DNA from: Octopus sinensis
Lineage: Eukaryota
Direction: 5' to 3'
Length of the DNA: 64,000 nucleotides
NCBI RefSeq assembly: GCF_006345805.1
Contig: NC_043006.1
Coordinates: 80,414,001-80,478,000, forward strand
Part shown: positions 24,695-63,493 of the stretch, piece by piece
Layout: every line of letters begins with the position of its first letter
Position numbering within the stretch: the stretch's first letter is position 1
Translations under genes and position numbers: made by a program
The notes under the pieces: generated by a model
What the model saw: only the letters and a program-made list of their open reading frames with translations
The model's database searches: none
Told to the model about the DNA's origin: nothing

Positions 24695-24714
24695 CATATA
24701 TATATACACACATG

Positions 24715-27620: not shown

Positions 27621-27768
27621 TGATTCAGTAAATGCAGCAGTCGTCTTTAGTTATGTGTGTTTTCCCTGTGAATAATTCCAAATAACAAATATTTTATTAT
27701 GAAAATATTTTTCTTAGTAAACAGCCATTTTTATTCCACTTAATAGTAAACATCTAGTTTTATTCGAT

Positions 27769-29123: not shown

Positions 29124-29157
<34 letters not shown>

Positions 29158-44887: not shown

Positions 44888-45831
44888 CATATTTAGATAT
44901 ACCTATACTTAGTTAGAAACTTATTAGCAGTGTAAATATACATGAGATACATTCGAACTTTTAATCCATCCATGGTATTTTGTCATAGAGTAACTTTCCC
45001 ATTATAGACACATATAGGTGCAAGAGCACCACTTAAGTTCTCAGAGTCCCCTAACCAGGCTGATGGAATCATACATTTCGGAGTTGTTATTTCCGCCTCA
45101 GTGCCACATACTGGAAAGTAAAGTGCCACAAACTGACAAGCGAAAGGTATCTGTTGCTATATCTTATACATGAGAAACAGTGAACATTTCAATCCAACTT
45201 TACACGGATATTCCCAGATGCTGAGACGTATGTATAAGCTATTTTTCAAACGATATCACGTAGGACCTTAGATGAATTGTGAAATTAACTGAGAAGAATT
45301 ATCAGGGAATATTTGTTTCGTGATAGAACTTTCTGCAAAGAGTCGGTCAGCTGATCCTTTCTTTCCCTTCATCTGAATAATTCACACGGCCAATTATGAA
45401 TTCTCAAAGACTACTTTTGCTTTGTATGTATTATGGATTTTCTCTCTCCCTAGATCTAACGAGTGAAACATTGATGGAAGCGACAATTAGCATGGTATTC
45501 TCATTTTTGGTATACTCATATTTGATGTCGTTTTGAACGTTGATCGATATACTACTTCATTGCACAAACAGCAATCCAGAGGACGGTGGGATGGTTTGGG
45601 TGGAATTGTCTCATTTACCAATTGAATAATGAATGACGCCTCTAGGATTTTGTTTTGGACTGCATTTCTTGATTCGGGAAGCAAAATTTTAGAGAGAAAT
45701 AACATACTTTAATGTGATGAGAGTTGAAGAGTTTATATGTATACCAAGTGGGTGGTAATTGGTGACTTATACGATTTAGTTAAACACCTAACTTATATAG
45801 TGTAATACGATGAAATCAATTAATTTCCTAA

Positions 45832-47739
45832 TTAGGAATGCATTTTGTACCAACATTTGCAGCACGATTCTTTGAAATGGCGTCTAACAACTTTCGTTGT
45901 CAAGAATGTAATACTAATTATTAAACCGAAATAAGCATTTCCAATTAAGCTGATATAGAAAACGTCGTGCAATTTGGCAATGGCACCTAATGGTATTATA
46001 TACCATGTTAATCCCATTATAAGGCTAAATTTAAAATAAATCATAATTCCTATATTATTACGTACCCCAAGATATTTTGATGAGTTTTTCCTAGCTAAAC
46101 AGAGACCCACGACTGTGACGATGAAAATCAAAGTATTCATTGATAAAAGTGTTATCAGCGGAACTCCAACAAACCACTTCGGAATTTCATTTCTATCATA
46201 CCAACAAAAATATCCGTCCGAATCTTCAGAAGAAATGGTCTGCGAATATATCAATGTTGCAATCACAAATATAAGTGGAGACATCCAAGCATATAAGGAA
46301 TAAAAGATAAATCTCTTCCCTTGTTTTTCAACAATTGGAAACTTTATAATTCCTGAAAATGTGTATAAAGCATCAAATGAAATAACATTCATCCAAAAAG
46401 CAGACGCTAACACGAAATAATGCAACAATGACTCGCCTATGTTGCACACCAAATGACGATCCGCAACAAAGTCGAAGAAATATAGAACCTCTGTTGCAAG
46501 TATTGAGAATAAAAGTCCAATGGTTAGTTTACCTGGTAATGTACGGAGTTCTGGTATACAGAAATAGACCATAATAGTGATGATTAGAGCTACACTGGAG
46601 GACCATATTCCCGTAAATAGAAGGTACACTTTAAGATCCATACCCACGTTTTTCCTATAATTATTTACACAAATACTAATACCTTGGGGATCTCGAATGA
46701 ATTCTGACTGGTTTAGCACTGTTCTGGAAGAATTCAGATAGATATTTCCAGCAAGAGTGAAAGAATACTCAGACTCTTTTAATCTTTCGGTGGTACAATT
46801 TACGATGAAACTAAAGTCAACTTGTCGGCATTCAATCTTCAGTTCGTCGTAAAGAAATCCAGCAGAACAATATGGCAATTCTTTCAAATATACTTTTTCA
46901 TTATTTGCATTTAATAGTTCAACTGTGTTATGATTATAGTTAAATATTGCTATTTGTCTATACTCCTTCTTTCCATGTGATATCTTTGAAGAGATCGTCA
47001 CGTTGCACTCAATATTATTAATACCAATATCATTACAAAATGCACAGTGTACGTTTCTAAAACTAGTCCCATTTGATCTGACAATAGCCATTGGTTCAAA
47101 AATACAAGGAGAATCTAAAGATATATTGGTAAATTTTGTGGGACAACTTGAAACATAATCAGTGCATGGATATTGGTAATTGCTAAAGTTCAATGGCGCT
47201 TCAATCGATACATTACAATGATTATTTCTCAATATGCGAGGGAAGTTTGATAAATCCATATCTATCTGATGATTGCATTTGTAGTGAACTGTCCATAATA
47301 TATATTCTTCATCGTTGCACAGAGCACAGAACAAATTCCTGTAAAGTCTTTTAGTTCGTTTTCCCAGAGCAGGTATGTTGTATAATTGATCATTTGCATT
47401 CAGTGTTTCACAATAGGTAAGGTGTTCTGTAACTGAATGGTTGCTTGGGCAGTGATCAAATAGAAAATAACTTTCTAATTCATTATCACTAATTTTCCTG
47501 CAATTATAATCCACTGATGAGATTCCATGGTCACTTATTGTTTCATTAATTACGTCTGAACAACATTCATTATAAAGATTACAATATTTATGACAAGAAC
47601 ATCTTCTTTGCAAACTTTCTGTATCACAAAGTGAAGGATAACATTCAATATTTTTCACCGAACAATATGAAAGCCGGATAACATGGTTTCCAAAAGCTAT
47701 CAGCAGAATGTGTAAGAGATTCCAGAAATGATGTTTCAT
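45832..47739 (-). CDS. Type-A receptor 2: paralog of 17170-19077, 635 aa, intact single-exon CDS
   Basis: Same length, same Cys pattern and 7TM motifs, no indels relative to receptor 1. Confidence 0.93.
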   Translation of the reverse strand: MKHHFWNLLHILLIAFGNHVIRLSYCSVKNIECYPSLCDTESLQRRCSCHKYCNLYNECCSDVINETISDHGISSVDYNCRKISDNELESYFLFDHCPSNHSVTEHLTYCETLNANDQLYNIPALGKRTKRLYRNLFCALCNDEEYILWTVHYKCNHQIDMDLSNFPRILRNNHCNVSIEAPLNFSNYQYPCTDYVSSCPTKFTNISLDSPCIFEPMAIVRSNGTSFRNVHCAFCNDIGINNIECNVTISSKISHGKKEYRQIAIFNYNHNTVELLNANNEKVYLKELPYCSAGFLYDELKIECRQVDFSFIVNCTTERLKESEYSFTLAGNIYLNSSRTVLNQSEFIRDPQGISICVNNYRKNVGMDLKVYLLFTGIWSSSVALIITIMVYFCIPELRTLPGKLTIGLLFSILATEVLYFFDFVADRHLVCNIGESLLHYFVLASAFWMNVISFDALYTFSGIIKFPIVEKQGKRFIFYSLYAWMSPLIFVIATLIYSQTISSEDSDGYFCWYDRNEIPKWFVGVPLITLLSMNTLIFIVTVVGLCLARKNSSKYLGVRNNIGIMIYFKFSLIMGLTWYIIPLGAIAKLHDVFYISLIGNAYFGLIISITFLTTKVVRRHFKESCCKCWYKMHS

Positions 47740-48384
47740 GCTGAATATATATTTTATAGAGCCACCTATAATTTAAAAGTAGTTATGTCTCATTACATTT
47801 GCAGCATCCAAAATTTGATTTAGTTCATGGTATATTCAGACTATATTTCTATTAGCAAATATGGACATATAATTAAGATTTACTAAATAATACGAGGATG
47901 ATCCGTTGAATGAAATACGTCACACTGTTGACTCTGTTAAAAGAAAGAAAGAATACATTAAGATTTTGTTTAACAAAAACTAGGTAATAAATTAATGTTT
48001 AATTTTCAGTATTTTCTAATATATCCATTGTTTGCTTCAGAATACTTTTTAATATGCTTCTTCTTTTAAGGCTCTGTCAATCTTTTATGCCTATATATCT
48101 GATAACCGAAACGATAGAAGTTCAATGGTATTGTATAAAATTTTGGGGAATATCTTTGTTTTTCCTACGTGAAATATTTTACTTCCATATTACCGTCGAT
48201 GGGCGCTCATGATAGGTGGGCGGTTATCTAAGCCCCCAAATAGTTTTGTAAAATAGAATTTTCCGTTTAACAGCCCTGGGCGAATTTTCGGAAAATCATG
48301 AGTATTTGCACCGATCCAATCCATGAGTGACAAATCACAGTGTGGAAAATTTTGAATTGGCAGCAAATCGGTGCAGATTAAAGA

Positions 48385-49000
48385 GGCGTCCACACGATCG
48401 ATACATGACATTTATTCCTAGAGGGCTAACATTAGCAAAAGCATGAGTAGAAGTAGCAGGAAAGAGTTGGGGCAAGGATGCCACCCTGCTTGACGCTATT
48501 CTCTACAGGAATCGTTCCCGCCATGCCACTACCAACATTGGCCCAAGCCTTTATCCCATCATGAAATGATTTAATTAAAGATACAAAGTGATACGGGCAT
48601 CCAATTTTGCCAAGTATTTTCCATAGTAATGCCCTATGTACAGTATCAGAGGTTTGGTTAAATCAAAGAATTCCTGGACAAGACCTATATTCTGCTAATA
48701 ACATTTCTCCTGCATCTGTCTTGCTGTGAAAATAATATCCATTGTTCCTTTACCAGATCAGAAACCACAATGAGATTCAGATAGAACATTTGCGAGGCAC
48801 ACATTCAGGCGGGTAAAAAGAATATTTGTCAGAACCTTGCCGGCAGGTGATAGTAGAGCAATACCTCTGTAGTTACCACACATTTTTCTGGTTCCTTTTC
48901 CTTTATAGAGAGGAAGAATAATAGCATCCTTCCAATCCTTAGGCATTGCACCATATCCACTAGACTACACTAATAGGCTCATGAAGGGACTGTATTATGT
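48385..49000 (-). mobile_element. RTE-clade LINE RT fragment (unit B copy, longer)
   Basis: PKDWKDAIILPLYKGKG..CGNYRGIALLSPAGKVL..LSESHCGF..TMDIIFTARQMQEKC. Confidence 0.85.
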
Positions 49001-49505
49001 AATCACCACCAAATCGTGAGTGGCAATCAAATGATTCAAGCAACCAAAAATAATTAATCTCTGAATCTTGTAACTACAGTTTACTTTCGGATATTCCTTC
49101 TCTTTTGATGTACTATGTAGAAACATTGAATGAAGCGGCAATTTGATAGTGTTTCCATTTAACTATGTACACTCATTTTTGATGCTATTTTCAGTTCATG
49201 TGATTGTTGGGTATGTAACTGTATTAGTTAGGCATCACTCTTGAGGGTGAAAGCGGCGTATATTTGTCGGCTACAAATTGATTGAGGAATTATATTTGCG
49301 GTGTTTGTGCTCGGGTATATTATTTCGTAGCGGGAGCATTATTTTTAATGGAGAAATAACATAAAAACAATATAACTTTTGACTGTTGAGGTTTTTTATG
49401 GTATTCTGAGCGTGTAGTAACAGATCCGTTAGGTGTAGGAAAAACTTGACTATACTTGTGATTTGTGTGCGGTGAAATGATTAAATCAAATTCATTTCAT
49501 GAATA

Positions 49506-51404
49506 TTATTTTGCTTCGTGAAATAATTTGCAGCATGCCTGTTTGAAATGACGTCTAACGGCTTTCGTTGATAAAAATTTAATATAAATTATTAAACCGA
49601 CATAAGAATTTAATGTGAAGCATATAGTGATTGCGTCATGCATATCGGCATAGCCAAATATTGGTATAAAAACCCAAGTGAAACCCACATTAAGGCTTAG
49701 TTTAAAATAAATCATAAATCCTGTTTTCTTACGTAGTCCAAGATATTTTGATGAGCTTTTTCTAGCTAAATAAAGACATATTACGGTAATGAAAAACATC
49801 AACGTATTATTTGATAAAATTGTTATTACAGGAAATGCAAAAAACCACTTGGACATCCAGTCCTTAAGATAACAAAGAAAATGTTCGTGCGGAAGTTTAG
49901 GAGAAATTGTCAACGAAAATAGCAGTGCCACTATCACAATTGCAAGTGGAGATATCCAAGCATATAAAGAATAGAAGATAAACCTCTTCCCTTTTTTCCT
50001 GCAAATGGAAATTTTATAATTCCTGAGAACGTGTACAAGGAATCAAATGATATGACATTCATCCAGAGGACTTGTGCTAGTACTAAATAATGCTCAATGG
50101 GTGTAATATAAAACACGGTATTTGAATTTTAGTATACGTGTTGATGAAGAAAAAAATTCGATTGCAAGCATGGAGAACAACAGTCCCATGATTAGTTTAC
50201 CTGGAAATGAACGGAGTTCTGGTATACAGCGATAGACTGTAATAGTTATGAATATTGCTACAACGGAGGACAATAATCCGATATACATCAGAGAAAATAA
50301 AAACCCTCTCTGCCCTCTTGTCTCATGATCATTTACACATATACTTATGCCTTGAGGATCTCGACTGAACTCTGACTGGTTTAGCCATGTCTGGGAAGAA
50401 TTCAGATATAGAAATCCATCACTAGTAAAATGATATTCCGATTCCTCTAGTCTTTTAGTTGTACAATTTAACACAGAATTAAATTTAACTCGTCGACATT
50501 CATTCTTTAGTTCAACATAAACAAATCCATGCGAACAAGGGGACAATTCTGTAATATAGTTATTTTTCAATAGATGCATATAATACTTCAACAGTGTAAT
50601 TATTGTAATTAAATATTGTTTCGAAAGTATACACTTCTATTTCATACGTCATTTCTCTAGACAGTTATGTTACATTCAGTATCATTAATATCAACACTGT
50701 TACAGATGGCGCAGTGAATATTTCTGTAATTAGTTCCATTTGATCTTACCATAGACATTGGTTCAAACATACAAGAAGACACTAAAGTTACATTGGTAAG
50801 TTTTAGGGGACAGCTTGAAACATAATCTGTACACGGATATTGGTAATCTTTAAAGTTAAATGGAGCTTCAATCGATACATTACAACAATTATTTCTCAAC
50901 ATTTGAGAGAAGAGTGATAAATCTATATTCATCCTATGTTTACATTTGTAGTGAACTGTCCACAATAGGTATTCTTCTCCATTACACAGAGCACAGAACA
51001 AATTCCTGTAAAGTCTTTTAGTTTTTTTTCCCAAAGCAGGTATGTTGTATAATCGGTCATTCTCGTCTGGTGTTTCACAGAAAGTAACGTGCTCTGTAAC
51101 TGAATGGTCGTTTGGAAGGCGGTCAAACAAAAAGTAACTGTCTGATTTATTATCGTTAATTTTTCTGCAGCTATAATCTGTTGACATTGTTCTATGTTCA
51201 ATTATCGTTTCGCTGATGACGTCTGAACAACATTCTTTATATAGATTACAATACTGATGACAAGAACATCTTTGATGCAAACTTTCAGCATCACAAGTTG
51301 AAGGAGAACATTCGAGATTTTCTACCAAACAATATGACTGTTTAATGACTTCGTACACAAAAGCAATAACAAATCTGAAAGAGATTCCCGAAGCGGTGTA
51401 CCAT
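49506..51404 (-). pseudogene. Type-B receptor 2: pseudogene with at least six frameshifts
   Basis: Versus 21737-23637: -2 in signal peptide (~51365), -2 at ~50660, +1 at ~50565, -1 at ~50152, -1 at ~50095, -1 at ~49995; DRCP changed to DRLP. Confidence 0.9.
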
Positions 51405-52310
51405 GTTGAATATTAATGTCGAATTCTCAAGTAGCCACCTATATTTTCAAATAATTTACACAACGAATTAACATTATATTTGATTTAATGTCAATCTATA
51501 TCGAGACTATTTCTTCTTGAAATAGTAACAAGATATTCCATTGAATGAATCGTTCAATAACTGTTGCATCTGTAAAAGATAAAAAAAACGAAAGCAACAA
51601 ATAAACGAAGACCGTATTAAGATGATTTTACAAAGGAAGCAGTATAATAAAGAAGAAAACTTGATATCAACTAACATTATAACGGAATTTCGTAAAGATA
51701 CATACTAGGCAAGAACGCAAAAAACGTTTTATATATTTTAAACAAAATTCGTAAGGTAAAATTTGAAATTAAATCATTTCGTAATGGTACAAATGACGTA
51801 AGTAGTAAATGTGGAAAACATTGGATGATTATGGTGACTTTAAATGGGATTTGTTTTTCGATTCTGTGGCTTCATCTCCGTGTTAGAATATAAGTTGCTT
51901 GTATTCTTTTGAATTCTCAGGCAAATCTCATATAAAGTTACAGCGTAACGAGTGAAAACTAGCCGTTACAAGTCCAGGACCCAAATGTTTGAATTTCCAA
52001 TGGATATTCTCATATCATAACTAATAACGAGTTGAGAATTTGGAAAACAAATACACGTCACTGAGAGTAGAATTTATAACCATAGATCCTTGCATATATA
52101 TAAGAACGCTTGTCACAAAATTGTTCATCCTGAAAACGACAGCCTGAGAAGGAGCAAGTTCTGGAATATAAGGGAAGTGCGACAGCAACAGTAGCGATAC
52201 CGTGGTCATCTTTTCCACGTCGCTGGTAAGCAGCATGCTCATTATTGTGCAACCTGTGAATACACTTTAAGCCCATTTTGAGTATGACGAGATCATTACG
52301 AATAATAATT

Positions 52311-52426
<116 letters not shown>

Positions 52427-52464
52427 TATATATGAATATATATATATACATATATATATAATAG

Positions 52465-52961
52465 GAAATATTGAATTCCTAAACTTCTCGTAGAGACATG
52501 TACGGTGGTGGGGCGATAGAATGGTTGTATACTGTCAATCTAACAAGAACGTGACAGTAGGGAGTATACCACCGTTGTATAGCCCTAGGAGGCATCGAAC
52601 GCCTCCTGACAGCTTCGACACATTTTTTTCCCTGTGTCCTTATATACATATACGAAGGGGAGACAAACACCCCCGACCGGTGTCTGCTACTCTAGGCCGA
52701 TGAAGGACAATGATCCTGAAACACGGTGTCCCTAGATGCAGTTCCGACGGCCGGGGGTGTTTGTCTCCCCTTCGTATATGTATATAAGTACACAGGGAAA
52801 ACATGTGTGGAAGCTGTCAGGAGGCGTTCGATGTCCTCTAGGGCTATACAACGGTGGGGTACCCCCTACTGTCACGTTCTTGTTAGATTGACAGTATACA
52901 ACCATTCTATCGCCCCACAACCGTACATGTCTCTACGAGAAATTTAGAAATTCAATATTTC
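52465..52961. repeat. ~500-bp palindrome (arms 52465-52679 and 52748-52961, ~68-bp spacer)
   Basis: Arms are near-exact reverse complements by eye; partial re-duplication of the arm at 52961-52990. Confidence 0.95.
52684..52741 (+). ncRNA. Type-I hammerhead ribozyme fold (U4C variant) in the palindrome spacer
   Basis: CTGC-TAC-TCTAGG-CCGATGA-AGGA-CAATGA-TCCT-GAAA-CACGGTG-TC-CCTAGA-T-GCAG; predicted GUC cleavage after 52730. Confidence 0.8.
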
Positions 52962-53100
52962 TTGTTAGATTGACAGTATACAACCATTCCATATATATAT
53001 ATAAATATATAAAATTTGATAAGAGTAGAAATTGATATTAATCAATTAAAACCAGTGGCCTAGCATATTAAAAAAATGCGAAGATTATATTTATTTTTAC

Positions 53101-53697
53101 ATACAAAATTTAAAGGACTGACCACTAAAAGTGGACGGTCAACGTGCTAGATATAGACGTGAAATCTCTATTTTCCACAGAGAATATGTTCTCAAATAAA
53201 AATCCAGCACGAACCAAAGTATGAAAAATAAACAAGACGAAATAAAAATGATTACCTATGTACCGATCAGTTTCGATTGATATTATCCACGCATGTAAAT
53301 ACCCGCATTCTCTTCAGCATAGTCGTCATATAGAAATAGAATTTGCAGGACTAGATACAAAAACGTTTGACCGGAGTCTCGCATGCATAGAGTCTAACCA
53401 ATTATATTTATGTGTATCTTTTAAATGCCTTCACTTTGGTGCGCTGAGATCGGAAATCTACCCTGCAGCCAAAAAGCAGCAGCAGTCAATTTACCGATTA
53501 GATAACATTTATTATTATTATTTAAAATTTAATAAGGGTAGAAATTGATATTTTCATTTGTCTTGCTTATTTTTCATACTTTAGTTCGTGCTGGATTTTA
53601 TTTTGAGAACATATTCTTTGTGGAAAATAGCGATTTGACGTCTATATCTAGCATGTTGACCGTCCACTTTTAGTGATCAGTCCTTTAAATTTAGTAT
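53101..53697. repeat. Inverted repeat (~150-bp arms 53101-53250 and 53550-53697) plus 29-bp direct repeat (53011-53039 / 53524-53552); Penelope pLTR-like
   Basis: Direct reading of arms; hammerhead abuts the inner end of the left arm. Confidence 0.9.
53256..53322 (-). ncRNA. Type-I hammerhead ribozyme with canonical core
   Basis: Reverse strand CTATG-CTGAAGA-(GA..36 nt..TC)-GAAA-CTGATCGG-TA-CATAG; GUA triplet, near-palindromic helix III; predicted cleavage between 53261 and 53260. Confidence 0.8.
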
Positions 53698-53961
53698 ATA
53701 TAAATATATATATAGATATATATATACATATAAATATATATAAATATATAAATATATATATATATATTCTCCCACCCCCCTTTCCTCACCAGCCTTCTCT
53801 CTACTACCCTACCAAGAGCTCACAACTACCTCGAACACACAAGTGCAAACAAGGGAGTCAGAGAAAGGCAGAATGCCACTTAAATCTGAACACTACTATA
53901 GAAATATTCTTTTAAAAAAACTTTTCTTCTAATTTTTCTAAATTTAATTATTTAATCGTTA

Positions 53962-53999
53962 CAGTTGAAAAGGTCTCAAAATGACCGAAACCGGTACTG
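53962..53999 (+). ncRNA. Degenerate minimal hammerhead
   Basis: CAG-TTGAAAA-GGTC-TCAAAAT-GACC-GAAA-CCGG-TA-CTG; helices intact, core has C3U and G8A changes. Confidence 0.55.
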
Positions 54000-54048
54000 A
54001 AATGTTCACTATAAAATTATTTTAGCATTTTCTATTTTTTACTTGTTT

Positions 54049-54094
<46 letters not shown>

Positions 54095-54095
<1 letters not shown>

Positions 54096-54311
54096 ACATA
54101 AGGGACATTAGCCATTTGAATGTGGCTAAGGACAGGGCAGGGCGGTGGGGGTGTTACTGATGCATTTAGCCCCAGGCGATCATCAACATCACCAGATAGG
54201 CTGACACCATCTGGTGACGTTGATGATCGCCTGGGGCTAAATGCATCAATAACACCCCCACCGCCCTGCCCTGTCCCTAGCCACATTCAAATGGCTAATG
54301 TCCCTTATGTG
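54095..54311. mobile_element. 217-bp near-perfect hairpin MITE
   Basis: CACATAAGGGACATTAGCC..CACCAGAT / ATCTGGTGA..GGCTAATGTCCCTTATGTG; loop about 6-11 nt. Confidence 0.85.
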
Positions 54312-54445
54312 ATGGAGCAGTTACTGTCTATATCTCGTTTAGAGAATTATTATTGCTATATATATATATATATATACTAGCTGAAGGTGACCCTCTCTAC
54401 GCGCGGGAAAGAGTGTGGTTGTTACTTTCTGTCGGTTCCTTTCAG

Positions 54446-54757
54446 CATGTAAAAAGCACCATCCGAACATGGCCGATTGCAGCGCCGCCTTGACTGGCTT
54501 CTGTGCCAGTGGCACATAAAAAGCAGCAACCGATCGTTGCCGCTGCCTGCCCCCTGGCACCTGTGCCGGTGGCACGAAAAAAGCACCCACTACACTCACA
54601 GAGTGGTTGGCGTTAGGAAGGTCATCCACCTGTAGAAACACTGCCAGATCAGACTGGAGCCTGGTGCAGCCTCCTGGCTTCCCAGACACTGGTCAAACTG
54701 TCCAACCCATGCTAGCACGGAAAACGGACATTAAACGATGATGATGATGATGATGAT
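54446..54757 (+). mobile_element. SINE 3' portion with internal subrepeats and (GAT)n tail
   Basis: Repeated CTGTGCC.GTGGCAC..AAAAAGCA units; GGCGTTAGGAAGG..CCAACCCATGC..AAACGATGATGAT. Confidence 0.75.
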
Positions 54758-55535
54758 TCTCCCTCTTTGTTTTTCTCTCACTTTCCCACTCTCTTACTTT
54801 TCTTTTCTCTCGGACTCTCCCTCGCTTTCTCTTACTCTCTATCTTTATCTATCTCTCTCCCATTTATAAACAGCAAAAGATCTTGAGTAAGTTGAGAAAT
54901 AAAATATTTTGAAAGATCAATCTTAAATATCATGCAGTAGCAATGGAAAGGTCTGCTTCAAGGCAGACAGCAAAACGCTAACATTTAAAAGGGACAGACG
55001 AACTTGCGAGCTGAATAAAAATAATAAAATATTGGAAACCAAAGTTTGAAGGGATAGAATTTGAGGATAGTAGAGTCACCATGGCTGGCATTTCTTAACG
55101 ACGGACAGCAACGTATTGACAGTTTAACGGCTGGCGTAAAATTTTGAACTTGATGGAAAAGAAAAATCGTAAACACCAAGTTTTGAAGTGATTCTTTCTC
55201 ACGACAGTAGACTCACCATGGCAAGCATTGAAAACTTCTTCATCATGGACGGCAACACATTGACGATTAAAAGGCTTGATGTAACAGAGAATTGCTAAAC
55301 ACCCGCTCCTTTAAATTTTAATCCCCTTCCAGCCCCATTTAGACCCCTTTTCACATTTTGGTTAATATAACCCGATTTCATTCGGGTCTACTGGGGCCAC
55401 ATTTTATAAGATGAGGAATTTTGTCCTAGAGGTCACGCCTTTCATTTGAGGAAAAAAATAGTTGTCATGCAAACTTGCCAGCACTTTTAACATAGGTGTG
55501 CATATTTTCAGCTCAACCGACCATATAATGCACAC

Positions 55536-55582
<47 letters not shown>

Positions 55583-56439
55583 GTGTGTATGTGTGTGTGT
55601 ATGGTGTGTGTGTGTGTGTGGTGTGTGTGTGTGTTGGAGTCTCTCTCATACGTGAGCGTTGACGCTGAATTCGACTGGTAAGCATGTATCCTTGTCTTTG
55701 TTGAAATAGTTGTGAGCTGTTGGAGTTATTTCTCTGACAGGTAATAAGAATTTCCATATCCTCCGAGGAAACGAACTGTTGACCCAGACAATTAGAATTA
55801 ATTTTAATAAAAGCATCAATTTAAGAAAAAATAATAAAGTAGTAAAAATGAAAATTTAGCACGAAAAGTTTGCAGGGTTCTAAATAAATGTTAAAATGTA
55901 ATAGATACGAAAAACTTATGTTATCACCAGAACACGAACGCTGGTTGGTGCGTTCTGTTTGTATTTGGTCGATCGGCGCGTTGACAGGTAGACAATAGAA
56001 TGCGATTGCGATGGCGATGGAATATTTGTTTCTCACTATGAATGCTGACAGATACATAAGTGAAAGTTAATGGAAGGTAAGAGATAGAGTGAGTGAAAAA
56101 GTGCTGGGAAGAGAGGAAATAGCGAGAGTGAGTTGAGGAAGACAGATACATTAACTAAGGGGAGTGGACTTGTCAAAGTTATAAATAAAAGGGAGTTAGA
56201 GGGGAATGGAGGATATAGCGTAAGTGAGGAAGATGGCCCCTAGCAACCACACCTTTTAAGATAGGGATTTCTAAGGTAGCCCACGGGCATCGACACCTCA
56301 TTTTACATGTCCCTGTAAATTTTGGAGCGAATCGGACGGGATGTAGTGGCATTGAAAGCGAGCCAAGCGGTAAAAACGCATTTCAGTTGTATATATATAT
56401 ATATATATATTTATGCACATATATATATTTACACAGAAA

Positions 56440-56488
<49 letters not shown>

Positions 56489-57432
56489 AAATGGATAAAT
56501 GAATTATCTTGTTACGGATTATTCAAAATTTAACCGATACCTGGGTAGCAAAAATCACAACGGAAAAAACACGACAGAAAAAATCACAATCTGAACATTT
56601 TCACATTTTGTTCGCCCGAGGGCAGCTAGTTAACGCGATTTTGCAAAACTCTTTCAGATGTCCCCACTGGAAGCGGCACACATTTCTTGCATACAATTGA
56701 AGCCTAAGATAATTAACACCTTGATGTCCTAAGAAAAGAAAAAAATTTGGGAAAAAAACTTTGAATTAAATTTGTAAAGGGAAATTACTCCCCTTTTAGC
56801 GTATGATTTGCTACTTATTTAGAAACAATATCAGGGATTATACTCCCCTTGTTTGACAAGTCATCTGTGTATAAACTGACCACAGACGAATACACAGACA
56901 CAGGCTTTTATCAGCCGCTTGACCTACAATATCTGCAATATATTTTCCCTCTAGCTGCTTCCTAACATACTGCCACACATACACAGGCGCACACACACAT
57001 ACATGTAAGTAGTTTCTCACACCCAAATAAGATAGCTTTCATTCTTAAAACAATTCGAACATTAACATTAGTTATACAGAATATATTCACACTCTTTGGT
57101 TTTCTGGAATTCTTCCCCTACCAAATTTAACCGCAGTTTGACCTCGATTTATTCCAACGGACTTTTTCGTCGGCCATCACCCACCCTGACATCAACGCAC
57201 ATTGAGAGACAGTTTTGTGCCTTACCATGGGCTTCTAGGGAGCGTTTTGTTCGAATAGCTTGCTGCGCACTTGTTTGGAGATTTAAATTCCTGGTTTTTC
57301 CTGAAGAGAAAGCTGCAAAATGGTCTCCTTATTCAATCCGAATTTGGAAATTTGCAGCCTTTGAAACATGTGTAGAAAATAATAAAATGGAATTTTGTAG
57401 AATCTTCGTTCAGCTCCATTTCTTCCCTTCAC

Positions 57433-57471
<39 letters not shown>

Positions 57472-57502
57472 ACACATATATATATTTACACACACACACA
57501 CA

Positions 57503-57548
<46 letters not shown>

Positions 57549-57574
57549 GTATATACATATATATATATATGTTG

Positions 57575-57879
57575 AGGCGCAATAGCACAGTGTTTAGGGC
57601 ACCGGACTCGCGGTTGTAGGACCGTGGATTCGATTCCCAGACCGGGCGTTGTGAGTGTTTATTGAGTTAAAACACCTTAAAGCTCCACGCGGCTCCAGCA
57701 GGAGGTTGGTGACTATACCTGCTGTACACCTTCGCCACAACTTCCTCTTACTCTTTTTTCTGTTGGCCTGCTCGTTTAGCCAGCGGTGTTTCAGTTGAAG
57801 GCTAAAACAATGCGAAGCGAACTGTTTTAGCGATGTGTAGCACTATATGATAGTTCGATCGATCACGGTTATCACGGTG

Positions 57880-57882
<3 letters not shown>
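57575..57882 (+). mobile_element. tRNA-derived SINE (same family as 24715)
   Basis: GGCGCAATAGCACAGTGTTTAGG..GGATTCGATTCCC. Confidence 0.8.
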
Positions 57883-57912
<30 letters not shown>

Positions 57913-58011
57913 TGTATGTATGTATGTATGTATGTATGTATGTATGTATGTATGTGTGCATGTATGTATGCATGTATGTATGTATGCATGCATGCATGTA
58001 TGTATTTATAT

Positions 58012-58096
<85 letters not shown>

Positions 58097-58399
58097 AATA
58101 GTCGTCAGAATTTTGCAAACAAATCCTTTTACTCCTTCATTTTTATTAGCGCTTTCCTTCCCTTCTAGAACTTGTCAAATACAATTTTGTAAATGTACAA
58201 ACAGCTTGTTCATTTATATAAATGTTTCTTTGATGAAGTGTGTGTGTGCGTTTGTTTGTGTGCATGTTTCTGCATGTGTATGAGTGTGTGTGTGAGTGTG
58301 TGGGGGCGTGATTGTGTGGGTGTGCGTGTGTGGTTGTGAATATGTCCATGTTTATACTGTGTAACTTCGATCACGCCTCTTTGAATTCCTTGATTTTCT

Positions 58400-59330
58400 T
58401 TGTTCATTATCCCAAGTCTTCTAGCAGTATGTTAATTTTCATGTTGTGTGACAAAGCTGAGTTCTTGTGATCAACATATGCTGAAGTTAAGGATTTCATG
58501 TAATACTGATAGCAGTTTTAGTTAGGATAATGAACAATGCTTGTGAAGAGATGAACTTGAAATACCTAAGGGAGACATCTGGAAGCATTGCGGAACAACG
58601 AAATGACCATCTGAGACAATACGACGACAAAGAAGCAGGCCTCCATACTCTACCAACATACCAAAGACCAACAAGTGTGTTTAGACAAGAAACGAAAAAA
58701 ACATATACAGAACTTCATGCACAGTATGCGGTTCTCTGGGTATGATCAGAAAGATAGGGTTCTAGTATACAGGGGGTTTAGATAGAAATTAGAAAACATT
58801 ATACGTAATGATGCCAGTGGTATCTGCCGTAGTTATAGAAACAAAGAATGAGATAGCATACAAAGAACTTTTGACAAAGCAAACAGGGCGAACACGTTGT
58901 ATAAAACCGACAAATATGAAGGAGTGATGTTTGTAGAGGCCACCGCCCGTGGAGAACAAGCCCGTAGATTTAGAAAAGGTCTGAAGGAGACCAGACTCAA
59001 CATTAACATTGTTGAAAAACCTGGCATTCACTGTGGAATTAGAAATTTAGTTTACAGCATAAGATGCATAGAAGGTGCTTGTGAAGACATGAACTTGAAA
59101 TACACAAGAGAGACATCTGGGAGCATTGCGTAACGACTAAATGACATCTGAGACAATATGACGACAAAGAAGCAGGCCTCCATACTCTACCAACATACCA
59201 CAGACCAACATGGAGGCACGGTGGGCCAACATGAAATGCGCATCTTATCCAAGTATCCAAAAGACACAACACTTAGTGAAATACGGGAGTACCTCCTTAT
59301 AAAGGAAACTTCCCCAAAACTACAATAGGA
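58400..59330 (+). mobile_element. Rearranged Penelope-like fragment with duplicated GIY-YIG segment
   Basis: YKTDKYEGVMFVEAT..LNINIVEKPG; VYSIRCIEGACEDMNLKYTRETSGSIA; ~140-bp duplicate at 58533-58673 and 59071-59210. Confidence 0.7.
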
Positions 59331-59820
59331 AATATACATAGTAGATATCATACCTCCATACTCATAGTTTATGCAGGCAGAGTAGAATAGTTAGTAGGCT
59401 GTTATGTAGGCAGATATATGTATGTGTGTGTGTGAGGCGGTTTAGACAAGATTTGTTACGACGTCAATAAATTTACATCTCTATGACTAAAAATCACATC
59501 GTTTTCATGCACAAGTAATAAGCAGAGGTTGTAAGTGTAGTGTGGATGATATCCACGATTTTGCCTGACCAACACTAGCATAGCCGGAGTGTTTACATCA
59601 TTGTTAACAGTTAGAAAAAAAGCAGAATAAAAAAAGATAAGCAAGATGCAACACACTTTTGCACATTCTTATCAGTGGAATCTTTGCCAAGTTGAATTAA
59701 TTACCATAGCTTCATTGTTAAACAACAAATCTTACTCTGTTCAAGCAAGTGAAACAATACATATATTCATTTTCGCCCGCACGCACACATATATGTAACC
59801 ATATACACACACATATGTAC

Positions 59821-59909
<89 letters not shown>

Positions 59910-60799
59910 CGTGTGTATGAAAAAATGCATTCATAAATACACACATGTGGATATAGATATGTGTGTGTGCGTGAGTGTATTTGTTCGTGTATGTGCATTC
60001 ACGCATGTGTGTGTGAGTGTAGTGTATTATTTTCTGTACCGCTTTACCTTAATATTTGAATATTTGATATTTGTCATTTACATTTTCCTAGAAACGGCTA
60101 CAACTATTTCAGATACCGCGACCATGTATATTGTAATATTTTGCATTTTGCATTGCATCGTCTGCAGAAGGTCTGAACGTATAATATTTGACTAGCATAC
60201 CGGCGAATCATTTGTAAACTGCAAATTCGCGCCTATGCACCACAGAAATATACGGATAGTATACTTTGAAAACGGTGCTGAAATTTTATTTCAAAGCATT
60301 ACCTAAGAAAAAAATTTGAATACTAGAATTTATGACGAACAGTTACCATTAAGTAAATAATATTTAATTTACCTGATAGAAAAAGTAATTGATAACCTCA
60401 TGAAACTTTGAAAAGTTGGAGAATTAAATGATTCCAAGAGTAAAATTTGTTAATTTTTCTGATTTGTGTATTCTATATATTTCAGTTCTGCGAAATACTT
60501 CTGACGGCTGCTGCAGCAATGGTTGTTTTTATAAGTCTTCCAGTTTCGGTATTTGCAAAATGAAGAAAACGGAAAATATATTTCAACCAATTGAGGTGCG
60601 TTACGTCATTAAAGGTTGTTGTAGTTAGATAGTATTTTCTTTTACATTATTTATATTATTCCATTTTGCACGTTAATTATTAACAATTTGGTATGATTAT
60701 CCCATATGTCACAAAATATTTGTTGTAAAATGATATTACTAGCAAGGGATAATTAGTTATGCTAATAGCTATACCAATTATCAAATGTACGACATAAAA

Positions 60800-62010
60800 T
60801 ATTTCATTGCTCCACAAAGTTTTGCAGTATCTCGATAGCGCTTCTTTGGAGGTTCTGGTTCAATTCCAGTAATATTCTGTTTAATCCGAATTTAGCTGAA
60901 ATTAAAAATTTTTTTTTTGGTAAAAAGTTAATAAATTTCCAGATGTTGGGGTGACGAGACCCAACTTGAGTTTTGAATGCTCGGTGCTATTCTTGGATAA
61001 AGTTGTGTTTCGAGCAAATCATCTGGAACTCTTAAATAAATATTCCACATATTTAGTGGGGAAGAGAGGTAGGTGTCGCACATCCCTTCTTTTAGGCCCT
61101 GCAATCCACGTATCCTCGAAATAATCAATGGTTGTTTGCGCTTCATCCTAGAAGGTGTTGTTATCAAATAATAACTCATATGCTCTTTTTGCCCTACCTG
61201 CTGGGACAAATGCTAATGCTGGTAACATCCTCATCACTAAAGCAAAATTAGAGTATATTTCATATTTTCGTTTTAAACCATTACTTTGAATTACAGGAAA
61301 GATACATTGGCTGAAGAGGAAAAAGCAAACGTTTTGTTCTGCACAAGGAAATTCTTTCAAAAATGCTTTCATCATCGCTTTCTCAAAAGCCATCGTTATT
61401 GACAATGGTGCATATGTTGGTTCAAGATTTTTTATATCCTGCAAAAACGTTATATATGTTTCTTCTGTTTTGTCCGGCAATAACAAAAACACGAACGGCA
61501 GCAAAACTTTCCCTTTTAATCCATGTAGGGTATATAACTGGTGAAACACTGTACATTAAGCCGCAAATATCACAATACGCTTTTCGACTGGTCCTGAGTC
61601 ATAAAGTAGAAATTGAACACCTTTAAAAGATTTAGTAATTTCAGGTGAGAATACTATTTTACTGCATGTTGATGGTAGGGCCGGTCCAATAAGGGTTTTT
61701 TGCCTTATAGATCGTATTGTTCTTTTACTACTTAGCATTTTTGGTAGTTTGCAGGCAACAACTTGATCGCAATCATCCAGAACAGTAGATAAGACTGACG
61801 GGGTGCATGTTGTGTTGATTTGGTCAGTTAAATTATCTTTGAAATGGCGTCTTTTGTTGCAATGTCAGCGGCGCCCACTATTTCCTCCTTTACAGTAAAT
61901 AATTACTGTAAATGTATTATGTTGTTGGATATTTTTCGCACTTCCAATAAACATGTTCACCATGTTCATAGTATGTCCATTATCACCCAAATTGTTACGC
62001 CTTTTTTCTG
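60800..62010 (-). mobile_element. MULE transposase pseudogene (unit B copy)
   Basis: FHQLYTLHG..LPFVFLLLPDKTEETY..ITMAFEKAM..CFFLFSQ. Confidence 0.85.
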
Positions 62011-62141
62011 ATTCAGTAAATGCATCAGTCGTCTTTCCCTGTGAATAATTCCAAATAACAAATATTTTATTACGAAAATATTTTTCTTAGTAAACAGCCA
62101 TTTTTATTCCACTTAATAGTAAACATCTAGTTTTATTCGAT

Positions 62142-62420
62142 ACTAGCAGTATTGCTCGGCGTTGCTCGGGTTTGTTTTCTTTTCGACCCTTTAGAATTGG
62201 AATTTTTTGAAAAGTAAACATTTTGCATTATACAGCTAGTTACGTAAACATTTTCCTGGTTGAAATAGACCAAAAATAGCGACACAGCAGTGGAAAATCG
62301 TAAAAAATACGGATTATCATAGAAAAAAAACAACTTTTGACGTAAATAATTTTTGGTCTTAACAGGGTCCCATTTGAATTTTCCCTTTTACGAAATGAAG
62401 AGCAAGCCTTCTTCTATGAT
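62142..62420 (-). mobile_element. Helitron-like element (unit B copy)
   Basis: Duplicate of 27769-28045. Confidence 0.55.
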
Positions 62421-63436
62421 ACTTGCTGTTAGTGGTATAACCCAGTAGTAGTACTGTGTGTGGAATCATCTTTAATAGTCAAGTGACTTAAAAGTGACCT
62501 GTTGCTACATGTCTAAATTCAAGAACTGAACTTTTTGGTTAATACCCATATTTGGCTAAATAGTTGTTAAGTATTTTATCTCTCTCTATTTTTTTATATA
62601 TAATTTTGCATATATGTTTTACATGTATTTATATATATGTTTATATGTTTTTATTGTTTTATATATTCTTACATATTCTTTCTGTATTTTACCTTTCATT
62701 CTGCATTTTTGTCTATTTGTGTATATAGAAGTGTATATGAACATATTTGTGCGTGTATGGGTATATACGTGTGTGTGTGCGTGTGTGCGGGTATGTATAT
62801 GTGTACATGCATATGGTTGCATATATATATGTATTGGTATACATCCATGTGTTTCACACGAGAGTGAGTGAGAATATGAACATATAACATGTGCGTATTT
62901 AGATGTATATATCAATATAGTTGTGCGAGTATGGGTATGTGCACGCGTGTGCGTGTGGGGGGATATGTATATGTGTACATGTGTATGGTTGCATATATAT
63001 AGACGTGTGTATGAGTGTGCTTTAACGTGTTTCACGCACGTGTTGGTGTGCTTATGCATAGCGGCACATGTACATGGGTGTGCGTGCGGACATGTGTATG
63101 TATATACATGCGCTCATACGCGAATTCTATGATCTTTTTTACCTTTTCACTTCCTCCCCTTCGCGTTTGTTCCCTTTATTTAACGGTCATTCTAATAGCT
63201 CTTTTGTTTGACTTAATAACGTTCATAGTAATTTCCATTTCTTTAACGGTCATTTTCATAGAATAATTTGATTGTCTTAATAACTGACGAGATGCCAGAG
63301 TAGTTTCCAAACCGATATACGAAACGTGGAGTTTAGTTATGGCAACCGATAAATTGTCATATATTATATTACAGATAAATTCCTCCATTTACATATTATC
63401 GAGGTTTCATTCATTCTTTTGTTGTCATACCATTAC

Positions 63437-63493
<57 letters not shown>

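What the first reader, a model, noticed from the sequence alone, without database searches (positions are those of the whole stretch)
45832..46660. Divergence between the two intact receptors is concentrated on the extracellular face of the 7TM, not the ectodomain
Seen (hand count, approximate): about 29 differences in residues 1-361 versus about 63 in residues 362-635. They cluster in the stalk/TM1 top (KRKARI vs RKNVGM), ECL1 (FIQYQSACNVYDI vs VADRHLVCNIGES), ECL2 (LQYIPPKDPVEYFCLFG vs SQTISSEDSDGYFCWYD) and ECL3 (LSAIAEIY vs LGAIAKLH). ICL1 and the C-tail are nearly invariant. Usually the 7TM is the conserved part. Inference: positive selection on a small-ligand pocket with shared G-protein coupling and a shared ectodomain function.
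Basis: partly seen in the sequence, partly recalled or inferred. Interest (0 to 1): 0.75.

Follow-up and report, generated by a model that had tools for sequence, protein, structure and literature searches.

The report
Fast-evolving outer face in duplicated octopus receptors
Two young tandem copies of an octopus Methuselah-like receptor gene differ mostly on the outward-facing half of their membrane domain, where protein-changing mutations built up about three times faster than neutral DNA, which suggests selection for new ligand recognition after duplication.

Summary
The two intact 635-aa receptors, A (17170-19077, minus strand) and B (45832-47739, minus strand), differ at 92 residues: 29 in residues 1-361 and 63 in 362-635.

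With helix boundaries from a predicted structure, 35% of residues in the extracellular half of the 7TM differ. The figure is 12% for the intracellular half and 8% for the ectodomain (extracellular vs intracellular p=6e-6).

Synonymous divergence is not significantly raised in the 7TM (dS 0.10 vs 0.07, p=0.39). Both values match the non-coding flanks of the ~13-kb tandem segmental duplication (0.058). So ectodomain homogenisation does not explain the contrast.

- **Rate on the outer face:** non-synonymous change there is 0.19 per site, 3.3 times neutral.
- **Codon models:** post-duplication omega is about 2.1 (p=0.011). M2a beats M1a (p=0.01), and 8 of its 9 candidate sites lie on the outer face.
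- **Replication:** the neighbouring pseudogene pair C/D shows the same excess.
- **Family contrast:** other octopus Mth-like paralogs show the normal pattern, with the 7TM more conserved than the ectodomain.
- **Both genes kept:** A and B have no frameshift or stop, where about 7 and about 6 are expected if they were drifting.

Positive selection on the outer face is supported with moderate statistics from four sequences. The "small-ligand pocket" and "shared G-protein coupling" claims are not shown. This is a new member of a known kind: rapidly diversifying tandem GPCR duplicates.

The parts
45832..47739 (-). Receptor B. Intact, intronless 635-aa Methuselah-like class B GPCR with a signal peptide, a Cys-rich DUF8401-type ectodomain, a 7TM and helix 8.
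   Evidence: ORF. Pfam 7tm_2 at 55.8 bits against a cutoff of 20.6. Seven helices in the AF2 model.
45835..46656 (-). B residues 362-635: stalk, 7TM and C-tail. This is the region of the finding.
   Evidence: 63 of 274 residues differ from A; dN 0.131, dS 0.100.
46603..46656 (-). B hot spot 1: stalk and outer half of TM1, residues 362-379 (RKNVGM...F..IW).
   Evidence: 9 of 18 residues changed; six consecutive codons each carry one non-synonymous change.
46420..46503 (-). B hot spot 2: outer TM2, ECL1 and outer TM3, residues 413-440.
   Evidence: 18 of 28 residues changed. The enclosing region 362-440 has omega of about 8.9, LRT p=3e-4.
46195..46245 (-). B hot spot 3: end of TM4 and ECL2, residues 499-515, around the conserved Cys512.
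   Evidence: 11 of 17 residues changed. M2a candidate sites 501, 508 and 515 lie here.
45955..46002 (-). B hot spot 4: outer TM6, ECL3 and outer TM7, residues 580-595.
   Evidence: 6 of 16 residues changed. M2a candidate site 595 lies here.
46669..47664 (-). B mature ectodomain, residues 26-357.
   Evidence: 26 of 332 residues differ from A. All 25 cysteines are conserved. Pairwise omega is about 0.5.
17170..19077 (-). Receptor A. Intact 635-aa paralog, 85.5% identical to B. Its 7TM and tail lie at 17173-17994.
21737..23637 (-). Paralog C. About 63% identical to A. A 4-nt deletion at codon 44 disconnects the signal peptide. A gene caller records it as a 561-aa protein (P0002).
49506..51404 (-). 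Paralog D. Duplicate of C, with six frameshifting indels. It is a pseudogene.
16951..29676 (.). Unit 1 of the tandem segmental duplication; carries A and C.
   Evidence: Self-BLAST shows collinear blocks at 92-94% identity. Non-coding p-distance is 0.058 over 6903 aligned bases.
45625..64000 (.). Unit 2 of the tandem segmental duplication; carries B and D. It is longer than unit 1 and runs to the end of the window.

Best explanation
**What it is.** The window is Octopus sinensis chromosome CM016868.1, about 80.414-80.478 Mb. A and B are young tandem paralogs of an octopus-specific Methuselah-like (class B, 7tm_2) GPCR with a Cys-rich DUF8401 ectodomain. A tandem segmental duplication of at least about 13 kb created them and copied a neighbouring paralog as well (C/D). 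Neutral divergence between the two units is about 6%.

**What happened since (shown).** Both A and B have stayed intact. Amino-acid replacements accumulated on both lineages, mostly in the outward-facing half of the 7TM: the stalk and top of TM1, outer TM2 through ECL1 to outer TM3, ECL2 and ECL3. The rate there is about 3 times the neutral rate. Meanwhile three things were kept:
- the ectodomain scaffold;
- the TM3-ECL2 disulfide (C432-C512);
- the activation core (W449, N451, D456, P527, N535, G576, W579, N601, G605).

**How it most likely works (inferred).** This is diversifying selection on the extracellular vestibule, or orthosteric cavity. In class B and adhesion-type receptors that cavity holds the agonist. 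The two copies would therefore be acquiring different ligand specificities. B's outer face carries a net charge of -4 and A's is 0. A has also lost the family-wide TM2 glutamate at position 417.

**Wider context (shown).** The recent divergence continues an older shift. The whole A/B/C/D clade has dismantled outer-face motifs that are invariant in the other ten octopus paralogs. It lost the ECL2 motif 'PGNHGLSPEYG..CWI.N' and carries a 5-residue deletion there.
For: - **Counts and topology:**. The extracellular half is 35% changed, the intracellular half 12%, the ectodomain 8%; extracellular vs intracellular p=6e-6.
- **Neutral yardstick:** non-coding duplicated flanks give p=0.058 (399 differences in 6903 bases). 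For A-B, outer-face pN is 0.192 (binomial p=7.5e-16 against 0.058), intracellular-half pN is 0.052 and ectodomain pN is 0.034.
- **Synonymous sites are not significantly raised:**
- **ML codon models (own implementation of GY94 with F3x4):**
  - pairwise omega is 8.9 for residues 362-440 (p=3e-4) and 2.4 for 362-520 (p=0.02);
  - on the four-taxon tree M1a vs M2a gives LRT 9.21 (p=0.01), with omega2=6.3 at 3.4% of sites, and 8 of the 9 sites with posterior above 0.5 are on the outer face;
  - the partitioned branch model gives outer-face terminal omega 2.12 (p=0.011), intracellular-half 1.09, and ectodomain 0.50.
- **Independent replicate:** for C-D, outer-face pN is 0.117 (p=6e-5 against neutral), intracellular-half 0.030 and ectodomain 0.027.
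- **Both lineages changed:** outer-face branch lengths are A 0.32 and B 0.33 substitutions per codon.
- **Both ORFs are maintained:** no indels where 7.2 frameshifting indels are expected (P=8e-4), and no stops where about 6.4 are expected (P=2e-3).
- **Control:** in the E-clade orthologs (O. bimaculoides vs O. vulgaris), outer-face dN is 0.051, below ectodomain dN of 0.089.
- **Family-invariant columns retained by A-D:** ectodomain 44-45 of 47, intracellular half 34-36 of 42, outer face only 19-22 of 39 (alignment).
- **Fold:** the 7TM matches class B and adhesion GPCRs by sequence (ADGRL2 9e51, E=6e-32) and by structure.
Against: - Only four sequences were available, two of them pseudogenes. 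The formal omega>1 tests are modest (p about 0.01). The strongest test (362-440) uses a region chosen after seeing the data.
- For the 7TM as a whole, omega of 1.4 is not different from 1. For A-B alone, outer-face omega of 1.9 has p=0.09.
- Outer-face pS for A-B is nominally raised (0.124, 10.7 differences in 86 sites). A small contribution from imported sequence or multi-hit codons is therefore possible.
- Differences are spread equally over the three codon positions, and gene-wide omega is 0.91. That is what a relaxed gene looks like.
- A and B are absent from the protein collection, whereas broken C is present. No expression evidence was available.
- The polarity of change is regionally skewed, which simple diversifying selection does not predict.
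- The family does have a history of domain-level mosaicism.
- Ritschard et al. 2019 (PMC6408891) found homogeneous purifying selection (omega 0.306) in this octopus Mth-like expansion. Their species were O. bimaculoides and C. minor.
Confidence: 0.58

Rival explanations
1. Relaxed constraint only. The A/B/C/D clade lost the ancestral ligand-binding role of the 7TM outer face, so that surface drifts freely. The ectodomain carries the remaining function. No positive selection is involved.
For: - Gene-wide omega is 0.91 and differences are spread equally over codon positions.
- Outer-face omega on the long internal branch is only 0.66.
- About half of the family-invariant outer-face residues are lost in all four copies.
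- C and D have already decayed.
- Post-duplication omega of the intracellular half is about 1.1.
- A and B are not in the protein collection.
Against: - Drift cannot exceed the neutral rate. Outer-face pN is 0.192 for A-B and 0.117 for C-D, against 0.058 in non-coding DNA and 0.06-0.12 at synonymous sites.
- Terminal omega of 2.1 differs significantly from 1 (p=0.011).
- M2a fits better than M1a.
- Both ORFs are kept free of stops and indels.
Confidence: 0.22
2. Mosaic history. Patches of the 7TM of A or B were imported by gene conversion from unsampled, more divergent paralogs. Alternatively, the ectodomains were homogenised between A and B. Either would make the contrast genealogical rather than selective.
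For: - The family does this at a deeper level. P0001 of O. bimaculoides is close to A-D in the ectodomain (dS 0.41-0.55) and far from them in the 7TM (dS 0.88-0.95). Its 7TM is instead close to its neighbour P0004.
- In A/B the polarity of change is regionally skewed. For codons 55-252 the split is 25 B-derived to 2 A-derived. For codons 437-548 it is 23 A-derived to 6 B-derived (post hoc Fisher p=3e-8).
- Outer-face pS for A-B is nominally raised at 0.124.
- A and B themselves are unannotated, so other unannotated copies may exist.
Against: - Ectodomain dS (0.068) equals the flank divergence (0.058-0.08), so the ectodomain was not homogenised.
- The hottest region, 362-440, has the lowest synonymous divergence: 2 synonymous differences in 48 unchanged codons, and 0 of 24 fourfold sites changed. 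A tract from a C-like donor would bring about 22 synonymous differences, and about 3 are observed.
- At 21 outer-face sites neither A nor B matches C, D, P0001 or P0004.
- No window has B-C or A-C distance dropping towards zero.
- No protein in the 5.8-billion-sequence collection has a closer 7TM; the best hit is 61% identical overall.
Confidence: 0.13
3. A local mutational hot spot, or clustered multi-nucleotide mutations in the DNA encoding the outer face, inflates dN and mimics selection.
For: Seventeen of the 20 codons with two or more changes lie in the 7TM. The same DNA segments are hot in both duplicate pairs.
Against: - A mutational cause should raise synonymous and fourfold-degenerate sites equally. 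Pooled outer-face pS for A-B plus C-D is 14/172 against pN of 95/614 (Fisher p=0.013).
- Hot segments alternate with cold ones in register with membrane topology. No mutational process is expected to track topology.
- The number of multi-hit codons fits independent hits at the observed elevated rate.
Confidence: 0.05

Closest known systems
Octopus-specific Methuselah-like GPCR expansion ('group 4', Mthl15-derived) of Ritschard et al. 2019 (PMC6408891)
   Same: - The same gene family: the homologs are named Mth or Mth-like in O. bimaculoides, O. sinensis and O. vulgaris.
- Tandem, co-localised duplicates.
- A 7tm_2 domain.
   Different: That study reported homogeneous purifying selection (omega 0.306) and no positively selected sites. 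The A/B/C/D subclade here has post-duplication outer-face omega of about 2 and an inverted domain-conservation pattern. A and B are not in the protein collection.
Drosophila methuselah (Mth) and the Mth/Mthl family (de Mendoza et al. 2016, PMC4768249; Schmidt et al. 2000 PNAS, recalled from memory because the paper was not held)
   Same: - A class B 7TM with a Cys-rich ectodomain.
- A family prone to lineage-specific expansion.
- From memory: Drosophila mth shows adaptive amino-acid divergence concentrated in loop domains.
   Different: - No Methuselah_N (PF06652) ectodomain was detected. The ectodomain is DUF8401.
- In Mth/Mthl generally the 7TM is the conserved region. Here it is the fast region.
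Adhesion GPCRs (ADGRL2/3, ADGRD1, ADGRG2)
   Same: - They are the closest solved 7TM sequences (E=6e-32 to 1e-28).
- The class B fold.
- The TM2 'AE' motif and the TM3-ECL2 disulfide are shared.
   Different: - No GPS or GAIN domain hit.
- Only about 6 residues lie between the last ectodomain strand and TM1, so there is no room for a tethered agonist.
Chemosensory GPCR families that diversify by tandem duplication with positive selection on extracellular or pocket residues (vertebrate TAS2R, V1R/V2R and OR families; general knowledge)
   Same: - Tandem arrays.
- Frequent pseudogenes beside intact copies.
- Intronless coding regions.
- Replacements concentrated at ligand-facing positions, with a conserved intracellular core.
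   Different: - These receptors are class B with a large conserved ectodomain.
- There is no evidence for chemosensory expression.
- Only four to five copies are seen at this locus.

Membership tests
Class B (secretin/adhesion-type, Pfam 7tm_2) GPCR | Significant match to the 7tm_2 profile | tested here: met
   B scores 55.8 bits, A 47.7 and C 41.7, against a gathering cutoff of 20.6.
Class B (secretin/adhesion-type, Pfam 7tm_2) GPCR | Seven transmembrane helices plus helix 8, with a fold matching solved class B receptors | tested here: met
   AF2 helices at 364-394, 401-425, 430-462, 473-501, 518-551, 563-585, 590-613 and 616-634. Foldseek top hits are CGRP receptor, PTH1R, GLP-1R, CRF2R and GPR110, with TM-score up to 0.74 on the target. 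Overall model confidence is low (pLDDT 53.7) but the 7TM scores 60-85.
Class B (secretin/adhesion-type, Pfam 7tm_2) GPCR | Conserved TM3-ECL2 cysteine pair | tested here: met
   C432 and C512 are invariant in all 14 aligned sequences.
Methuselah/Methuselah-like subfamily | Placement of the 7TM inside the Mth/Mthl clade by phylogeny | not tested
   This rests on the source names of the homologs ('G-protein coupled receptor Mth', 'Mth-like', 'Mth2-like') and on the published assignment of the octopus expansion to Mthl15. No tree with Drosophila sequences was built here.
Methuselah/Methuselah-like subfamily | Methuselah_N ectodomain (PF06652). This defines the arthropod Mth-ectodomain-positive subgroup only. 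| tested here: not met
   No hit at E up to 1. This agrees with de Mendoza et al. 2016, who found the domain to be arthropod-specific.
DUF8401 (PF28443) ectodomain proteins | Match to PF28443 | tested here: inconclusive
   The model is not in the local Pfam copy. Precomputed hits exist for C (P0002) and for 14 homologs. The A and B ectodomains are 68-71% identical to C's.
Adhesion GPCR | GAIN domain with a GPS autoproteolysis motif and a tethered agonist before TM1 | tested here: not met
   No GPS or GAIN Pfam hit. The last ectodomain strand (353-357) is followed by helix TM1 from residue 364.
Genes under post-duplication positive selection | Non-synonymous rate above the neutral rate, with omega significantly above 1 | tested here: met
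   Outer-face pN is 0.192 against 0.058 in non-coding DNA (p=7.5e-16). Terminal omega is 2.12 (LRT p=0.011). M1a vs M2a gives p=0.01. The statistics are moderate, from four taxa.
Genes under post-duplication positive selection | The signal is not produced by recombination or gene conversion | tested here: inconclusive
   There is no synonymous excess in the hot region and no donor among the known paralogs. The rest of the genome could not be searched, and the polarity of change is regionally skewed.
Genes under post-duplication positive selection | Both copies are functional (expressed and intact) | tested here: inconclusive
   Intactness is highly non-random. Expression could not be tested, and neither protein is on record.

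The most novel reading that the evidence does not exclude
The A/B/C/D lineage is the start of a class-B-derived receptor family that works like a chemoreceptor. A conserved DUF8401 ectodomain would serve as a fixed scaffold or co-receptor module. The 7TM vestibule would be a hypervariable, birth-and-death-evolving site for exogenous ligands such as environmental, microbial or prey-derived molecules. It would be an octopus invention parallel to the nicotinic-derived chemotactile receptors.
Probability: 0.1. Interest if true: 0.7.

Novelty: new member of a known kind. Interest (0 to 1): 0.45.

Why it matters
Cephalopod GPCR expansions are thought to underlie lineage-specific sensory and neural novelties. 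The Methuselah-like expansion had been described as evolving under uniform purifying selection.

This locus shows a subclade in which the selective regime flipped. The family's invariant extracellular 7TM surface was dismantled and keeps changing faster than neutral after each duplication. The ectodomain and the activation core are kept.

That gives a concrete pair of natural near-identical receptors (85.5% identical) whose differences map to four short segments. They are ready-made loop-swap material for deorphanising an Mth-like receptor. No ligand-binding determinants on the 7TM of this family are known.

The locus is also a caution for family-wide codeml tests. Unannotated intronless copies and domain-level mosaicism (the P0001 case) can hide or mimic such signals.

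Tried and rejected
- **Compensated frameshifts** as the cause of the runs of changed residues. Rejected: the codon alignment shows in-frame point substitutions.
- **Ectodomain homogenisation by A-B gene conversion.** Rejected: ectodomain dS equals flank divergence.
- **Conversion of A or B from C or D.** Rejected: no window shows a reduced distance to C or D beyond what the other copy's derived changes account for.
- **One copy degenerating.** Rejected: outer-face branch lengths are equal for A and B, and both ORFs are intact.
- **Looking up A and B as exact proteins** to find other assemblies or transcripts. Neither is on record.
- **Reaching O. vulgaris or O. bimaculoides orthologs through neighbouring genes** (P0001, P0003, P0004, P0012). 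The loci obtained hold only the E-type and P0001-type paralogs. By dS, P0001 is not the ortholog: 0.41-0.55 against 0.12-0.18 for a true ortholog pair.
- **Pfam on the ectodomain.** The local library gave no family.
- **AF2 for the ectodomain.** Confidence was too low (pLDDT below 50 for residues 1-222) to interpret or to search by fold.
- **Schmidt et al. 2000.** The paper could not be read.
- **Global runs test on the polarity string.** Not significant (p=0.09). Only the post hoc regional contrast is.
Full report
**What is in the window**

The window is AT-rich, microsatellite-rich animal DNA. An exact-protein look-up of one of its ORFs places it on Octopus sinensis chromosome CM016868.1 (GCA_006345805.1), at about 80,414,001-80,478,000.

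It holds four intronless paralogous receptor genes on the minus strand:
- A, 17170-19077, 635 aa, intact.
- C, 21737-23637.
- B, 45832-47739, 635 aa, intact.
- D, 49506-51404.

A decayed 5' fragment of a fifth copy lies near 30150-30420.

Self-BLAST shows a tandem segmental duplication in which 16951-29676 corresponds to 45625-64000. A pairs with B and C pairs with D, and insertions differ between the two units. C carries a 4-nt deletion at codon 44. D carries six frameshifting indels. A and B carry none.

**Family**

A, B and C match Pfam 7tm_2 well above threshold. The closest proteins are Octopus 'Mth / Mth-like' receptors at 52-61% identity. These carry 7tm_2 plus DUF8401 (PF28443) as their ectodomain.

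The family is the octopus-specific Methuselah-like expansion ('group 4') of Ritschard et al. 2019 (PMC6408891). That study described it as tandemly co-localised and under homogeneous purifying selection, with omega 0.306 and no selected sites.

The nearest solved 7TM sequences are adhesion GPCRs (ADGRL2, E=6e-32). The AF2 model's 7TM matches class B1 and adhesion receptor structures. No GPS/GAIN domain and no Methuselah_N domain is detectable.

**Check of the observation**

The hand count is exact: 92 differences, 29 in residues 1-361 and 63 in 362-635 (Fisher p=1.8e-7). The quoted peptide clusters are all present. They arise from in-frame point substitutions, not from compensated frameshifts.

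I took helix boundaries from an independent AF2 prediction (overall pLDDT 53.7, with the 7TM at 60-85) and split each helix at its midpoint. The results:

| Region | Changed / total | Percent |
|---|---|---|
| Extracellular half, including stalk and ECL1-3 | 46 / 132 | 35% |
| Intracellular half, including ICL1-3, helix 8 and tail | 17 / 146 | 12% |
| Mature ectodomain | 26 / 332 | 7.8% |

The extracellular-vs-intracellular contrast gives p=6e-6. ICL1 has 0 of 6 residues changed, and helix 8 plus tail has 1 of 22.

**Is it genealogy or selection?**

That is not seen.
- By Nei-Gojobori, dS is 0.068 in the ectodomain and 0.100 in the 7TM, while dN is 0.035 and 0.131.
- Restricting to codons with an unchanged amino acid, pS is 0.061 vs 0.087 (p=0.39). 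Fourfold sites give 0.051 vs 0.085 (p=0.38).
- The non-coding parts of the duplication give an external neutral yardstick of p=0.058 (399 of 6903 bases). The immediate A/B flanks are at 0.062 and 0.082.

So the ectodomain was not homogenised, and the 7TM is not simply older.

Against that yardstick:
- Outer-face pN is 0.192 (p=7.5e-16).
- Intracellular-half pN is 0.052, indistinguishable from neutral.
- Ectodomain pN is 0.034, below neutral (p=0.002).

**Codon models**

I implemented GY94 with F3x4 codon frequencies myself.
- Pairwise omega is 0.64 for the ectodomain and 1.42 for the whole 7TM; neither differs from 1.
- Pairwise omega is 8.9 for residues 362-440 (LRT p=3e-4, region chosen post hoc), 2.4 for 362-520 (p=0.02) and 0.6 for 521-635.
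- On the tree ((A,B),(C,D)), M2a beats M1a (LRT 9.21, p=0.01), with omega2=6.3 at 3.4% of sites.
- Eight of the nine sites with posterior above 0.5 are on the outer face: 424, 428, 435, 501, 508, 515, 518 and 595. None is in the intracellular half.

A branch model fitted to each partition gives the following:

| Partition | Terminal (post-duplication) omega | Internal omega |
|---|---|---|
| Outer face | 2.12 (LRT vs 1, p=0.011) | 0.66 |
| Intracellular half | 1.09 | 0.33 |
| Ectodomain | 0.50 (significantly below 1) | 0.27 |

**Replication and controls**

The second duplicate pair is an independent replicate. For C-D, outer-face pN is 0.117 (p=6e-5 against neutral), intracellular-half pN is 0.030 and ectodomain pN is 0.027. 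This holds even though both copies are now damaged.

The older A/B vs C/D split has outer-face omega of 0.8-1.0, against 0.3-0.4 for the ectodomain and 0.4-0.5 for the intracellular half.

In contrast, an ortholog pair of the neighbouring E-type paralog (O. bimaculoides P0004 vs O. vulgaris) shows the ordinary pattern: outer-face dN 0.051, ectodomain dN 0.089, intracellular-half dN 0.025.

Across all pairs of the other ten octopus paralogs, the 7TM is 3-43 identity points more conserved than the ectodomain. In the A/B/C/D clade it is 9-35 points less conserved.

I also looked at columns that are invariant in those ten paralogs. A-D retain 44-45 of 47 in the ectodomain and 34-36 of 42 in the intracellular half. 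They retain only 19-22 of 39 on the outer face. The ECL2 motif 'PGNHGLSPEYG..CWI.N' is gone, with a 5-residue deletion.

**Are both genes alive?**

Given the indel and substitution spectrum of the flanks, a drifting 1905-nt sequence pair should have about 7.2 frameshifting indels and about 6.4 stop codons. A and B have none (P about 8e-4 and 2e-3).

All 25 ectodomain cysteines are kept, as are the C432-C512 pair and the family's core residues: W449, N451, D456, P527, N535, G576, W579, N601 and G605.

Both lineages contributed to the outer-face divergence, with branch lengths of 0.32 and 0.33 substitutions per codon. Expression could not be tested, and neither protein is in the public protein collection.

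**Mechanism proposed**

This part is inference. In class B and adhesion-type receptors the agonist sits in the cavity lined by the outer halves of TM1, TM2, TM3, TM5, TM6 and TM7 and capped by ECL1-3.

The replacements fall on exactly these elements. In TM1 (375, 378, 379) and TM2 (413/414, 417/418, 420-422, 425) they recur with helical periodicity, which suggests one helix face. They also change the electrostatics: net outer-face charge is 0 in A and -4 in B, which also has three histidines there. A alone has lost the family-wide TM2 glutamate (E417V).

The likeliest reading is diversifying selection for altered ligand recognition, with the fold and the activation core preserved. Nothing here indicates whether the ligand is small.

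**Caveats and rivals**

*Relaxation alone.* It fits several facts:
- gene-wide omega of 0.91;
- the equal spread of differences over codon positions;
- intracellular-half omega of about 1;
- the decay of C and D.

It cannot give rates above neutral.

*Conversion from an unsampled paralog.* It cannot be excluded, because the rest of the genome was not searchable. The family does show domain-level mosaicism. O. bimaculoides P0001 has an A-D-like ectodomain (dS 0.41-0.55), while its 7TM is close to that of its neighbour P0004.

There is also an unexplained regional skew in polarity between A and B:
- For codons 55-252 the split is 25 B-derived to 2 A-derived, including six synonymous sites.
- For codons 437-548 it is 23 A-derived to 6 B-derived.

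The hottest region (362-440) argues against import as the main cause. It has mixed polarity and the lowest synonymous divergence. At 21 outer-face sites neither copy matches any known paralog.

*A mutational hot spot.* This is unlikely, because pooled silent sites are not raised in step with replacements (14/172 vs 95/614, p=0.013).

**Verdict**

The positive-selection reading is supported at moderate strength. The details about ligand type and conserved coupling are not established.

The phenomenon is a known kind: tandem GPCR duplicates diversifying at the ligand-facing surface. It appears here in a family and species where it had not been reported, and with an unusual inversion of domain conservation relative to the rest of the family.

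Noticed in passing
window 21737-23637 (C) and 49506-51404 (D), minus strand: The second gene of each duplication unit is damaged. C has one 4-nt deletion at codon 44. D has six frameshifting indels, most of them not at homopolymers. The C/D pair still shows the same outer-face excess of replacements, at twice the neutral rate. A gene caller nevertheless records C as a 561-aa protein (P0002).
   Followed up: yes
window about 30150-30420, minus strand: A stop-ridden relic of the first ~90 codons of a fifth, C/D-like receptor copy (...CHQYCYLYNGCCSDVISETIIEHGTM*TDYSCR...). It lies just beyond the end of duplication unit 1.
   Followed up: partly
L002 10001-11965 (O. bimaculoides P0001) compared with window genes and L005 (P0004): Domain-discordant genealogy. 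P0001's ectodomain is closest to A-D (dS 0.41-0.55). From about residue 355 onward, its 7TM is closest to its neighbour P0004 (nucleotide p-distance 0.10-0.20) and far from A-D (dS about 0.9). This points to an old gene-conversion or recombination event at the ectodomain/7TM boundary.
   Followed up: partly
A/B codons 55-252 (window 46984-47577 in B) and codons 437-548 (window 46096-46431 in B): The polarity of A/B differences, judged against C/D, is regionally skewed. Nearly all ectodomain changes, including six synonymous ones, are on the B lineage. Most TM3-TM5 changes are on the A lineage. Possible causes are complementary divergence, unequal rates, or a hidden donor. It remains unexplained.
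   Followed up: partly
A residue 417 (window 17827-17829) and A residues 362-366 (window 17980-17994): A alone has replaced the TM2 glutamate (E417V). That position is acidic in all 13 other aligned family members: Glu in 12 and Asp in one. The Glu is also present in latrophilin. A's stalk reads KRKAR, a polybasic motif resembling a minimal furin site (R-x-x-R) immediately before TM1, whereas B reads RKNVG.
   Followed up: no
L003 10019-11890 and 24960-26830 (O. vulgaris OX597822.1): The O. vulgaris 'Mth-like' gene model P0003 (659 aa, spanning 27 kb) is a chimera. It joins the ectodomains of two tandem E-type copies and contains no 7TM. The first copy is in fact an intact intronless 654-aa gene.
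   Followed up: partly
window 4580-5676 (+), 12840-13343 (-), 26729-27085 and 61148-61549 (-), 637-736: Transposon remnants are present: a piggyBac-type DDE_Tnp_1_7, a Tc1/mariner HTH_Tnp_Tc3_2, and a MULE transposase fragment that lies inside the duplicated unit. There is a 100-N assembly gap at 637-736 and abundant TA/CA microsatellites.
   Followed up: partly
window 17170-19077 and 45832-47739: Neither intact receptor (A or B) exists as a protein in the 5.8-billion-sequence collection or in the gene-position index, while their broken neighbour C does. The two best-preserved genes of the cluster therefore appear to be unannotated.
   Followed up: partly
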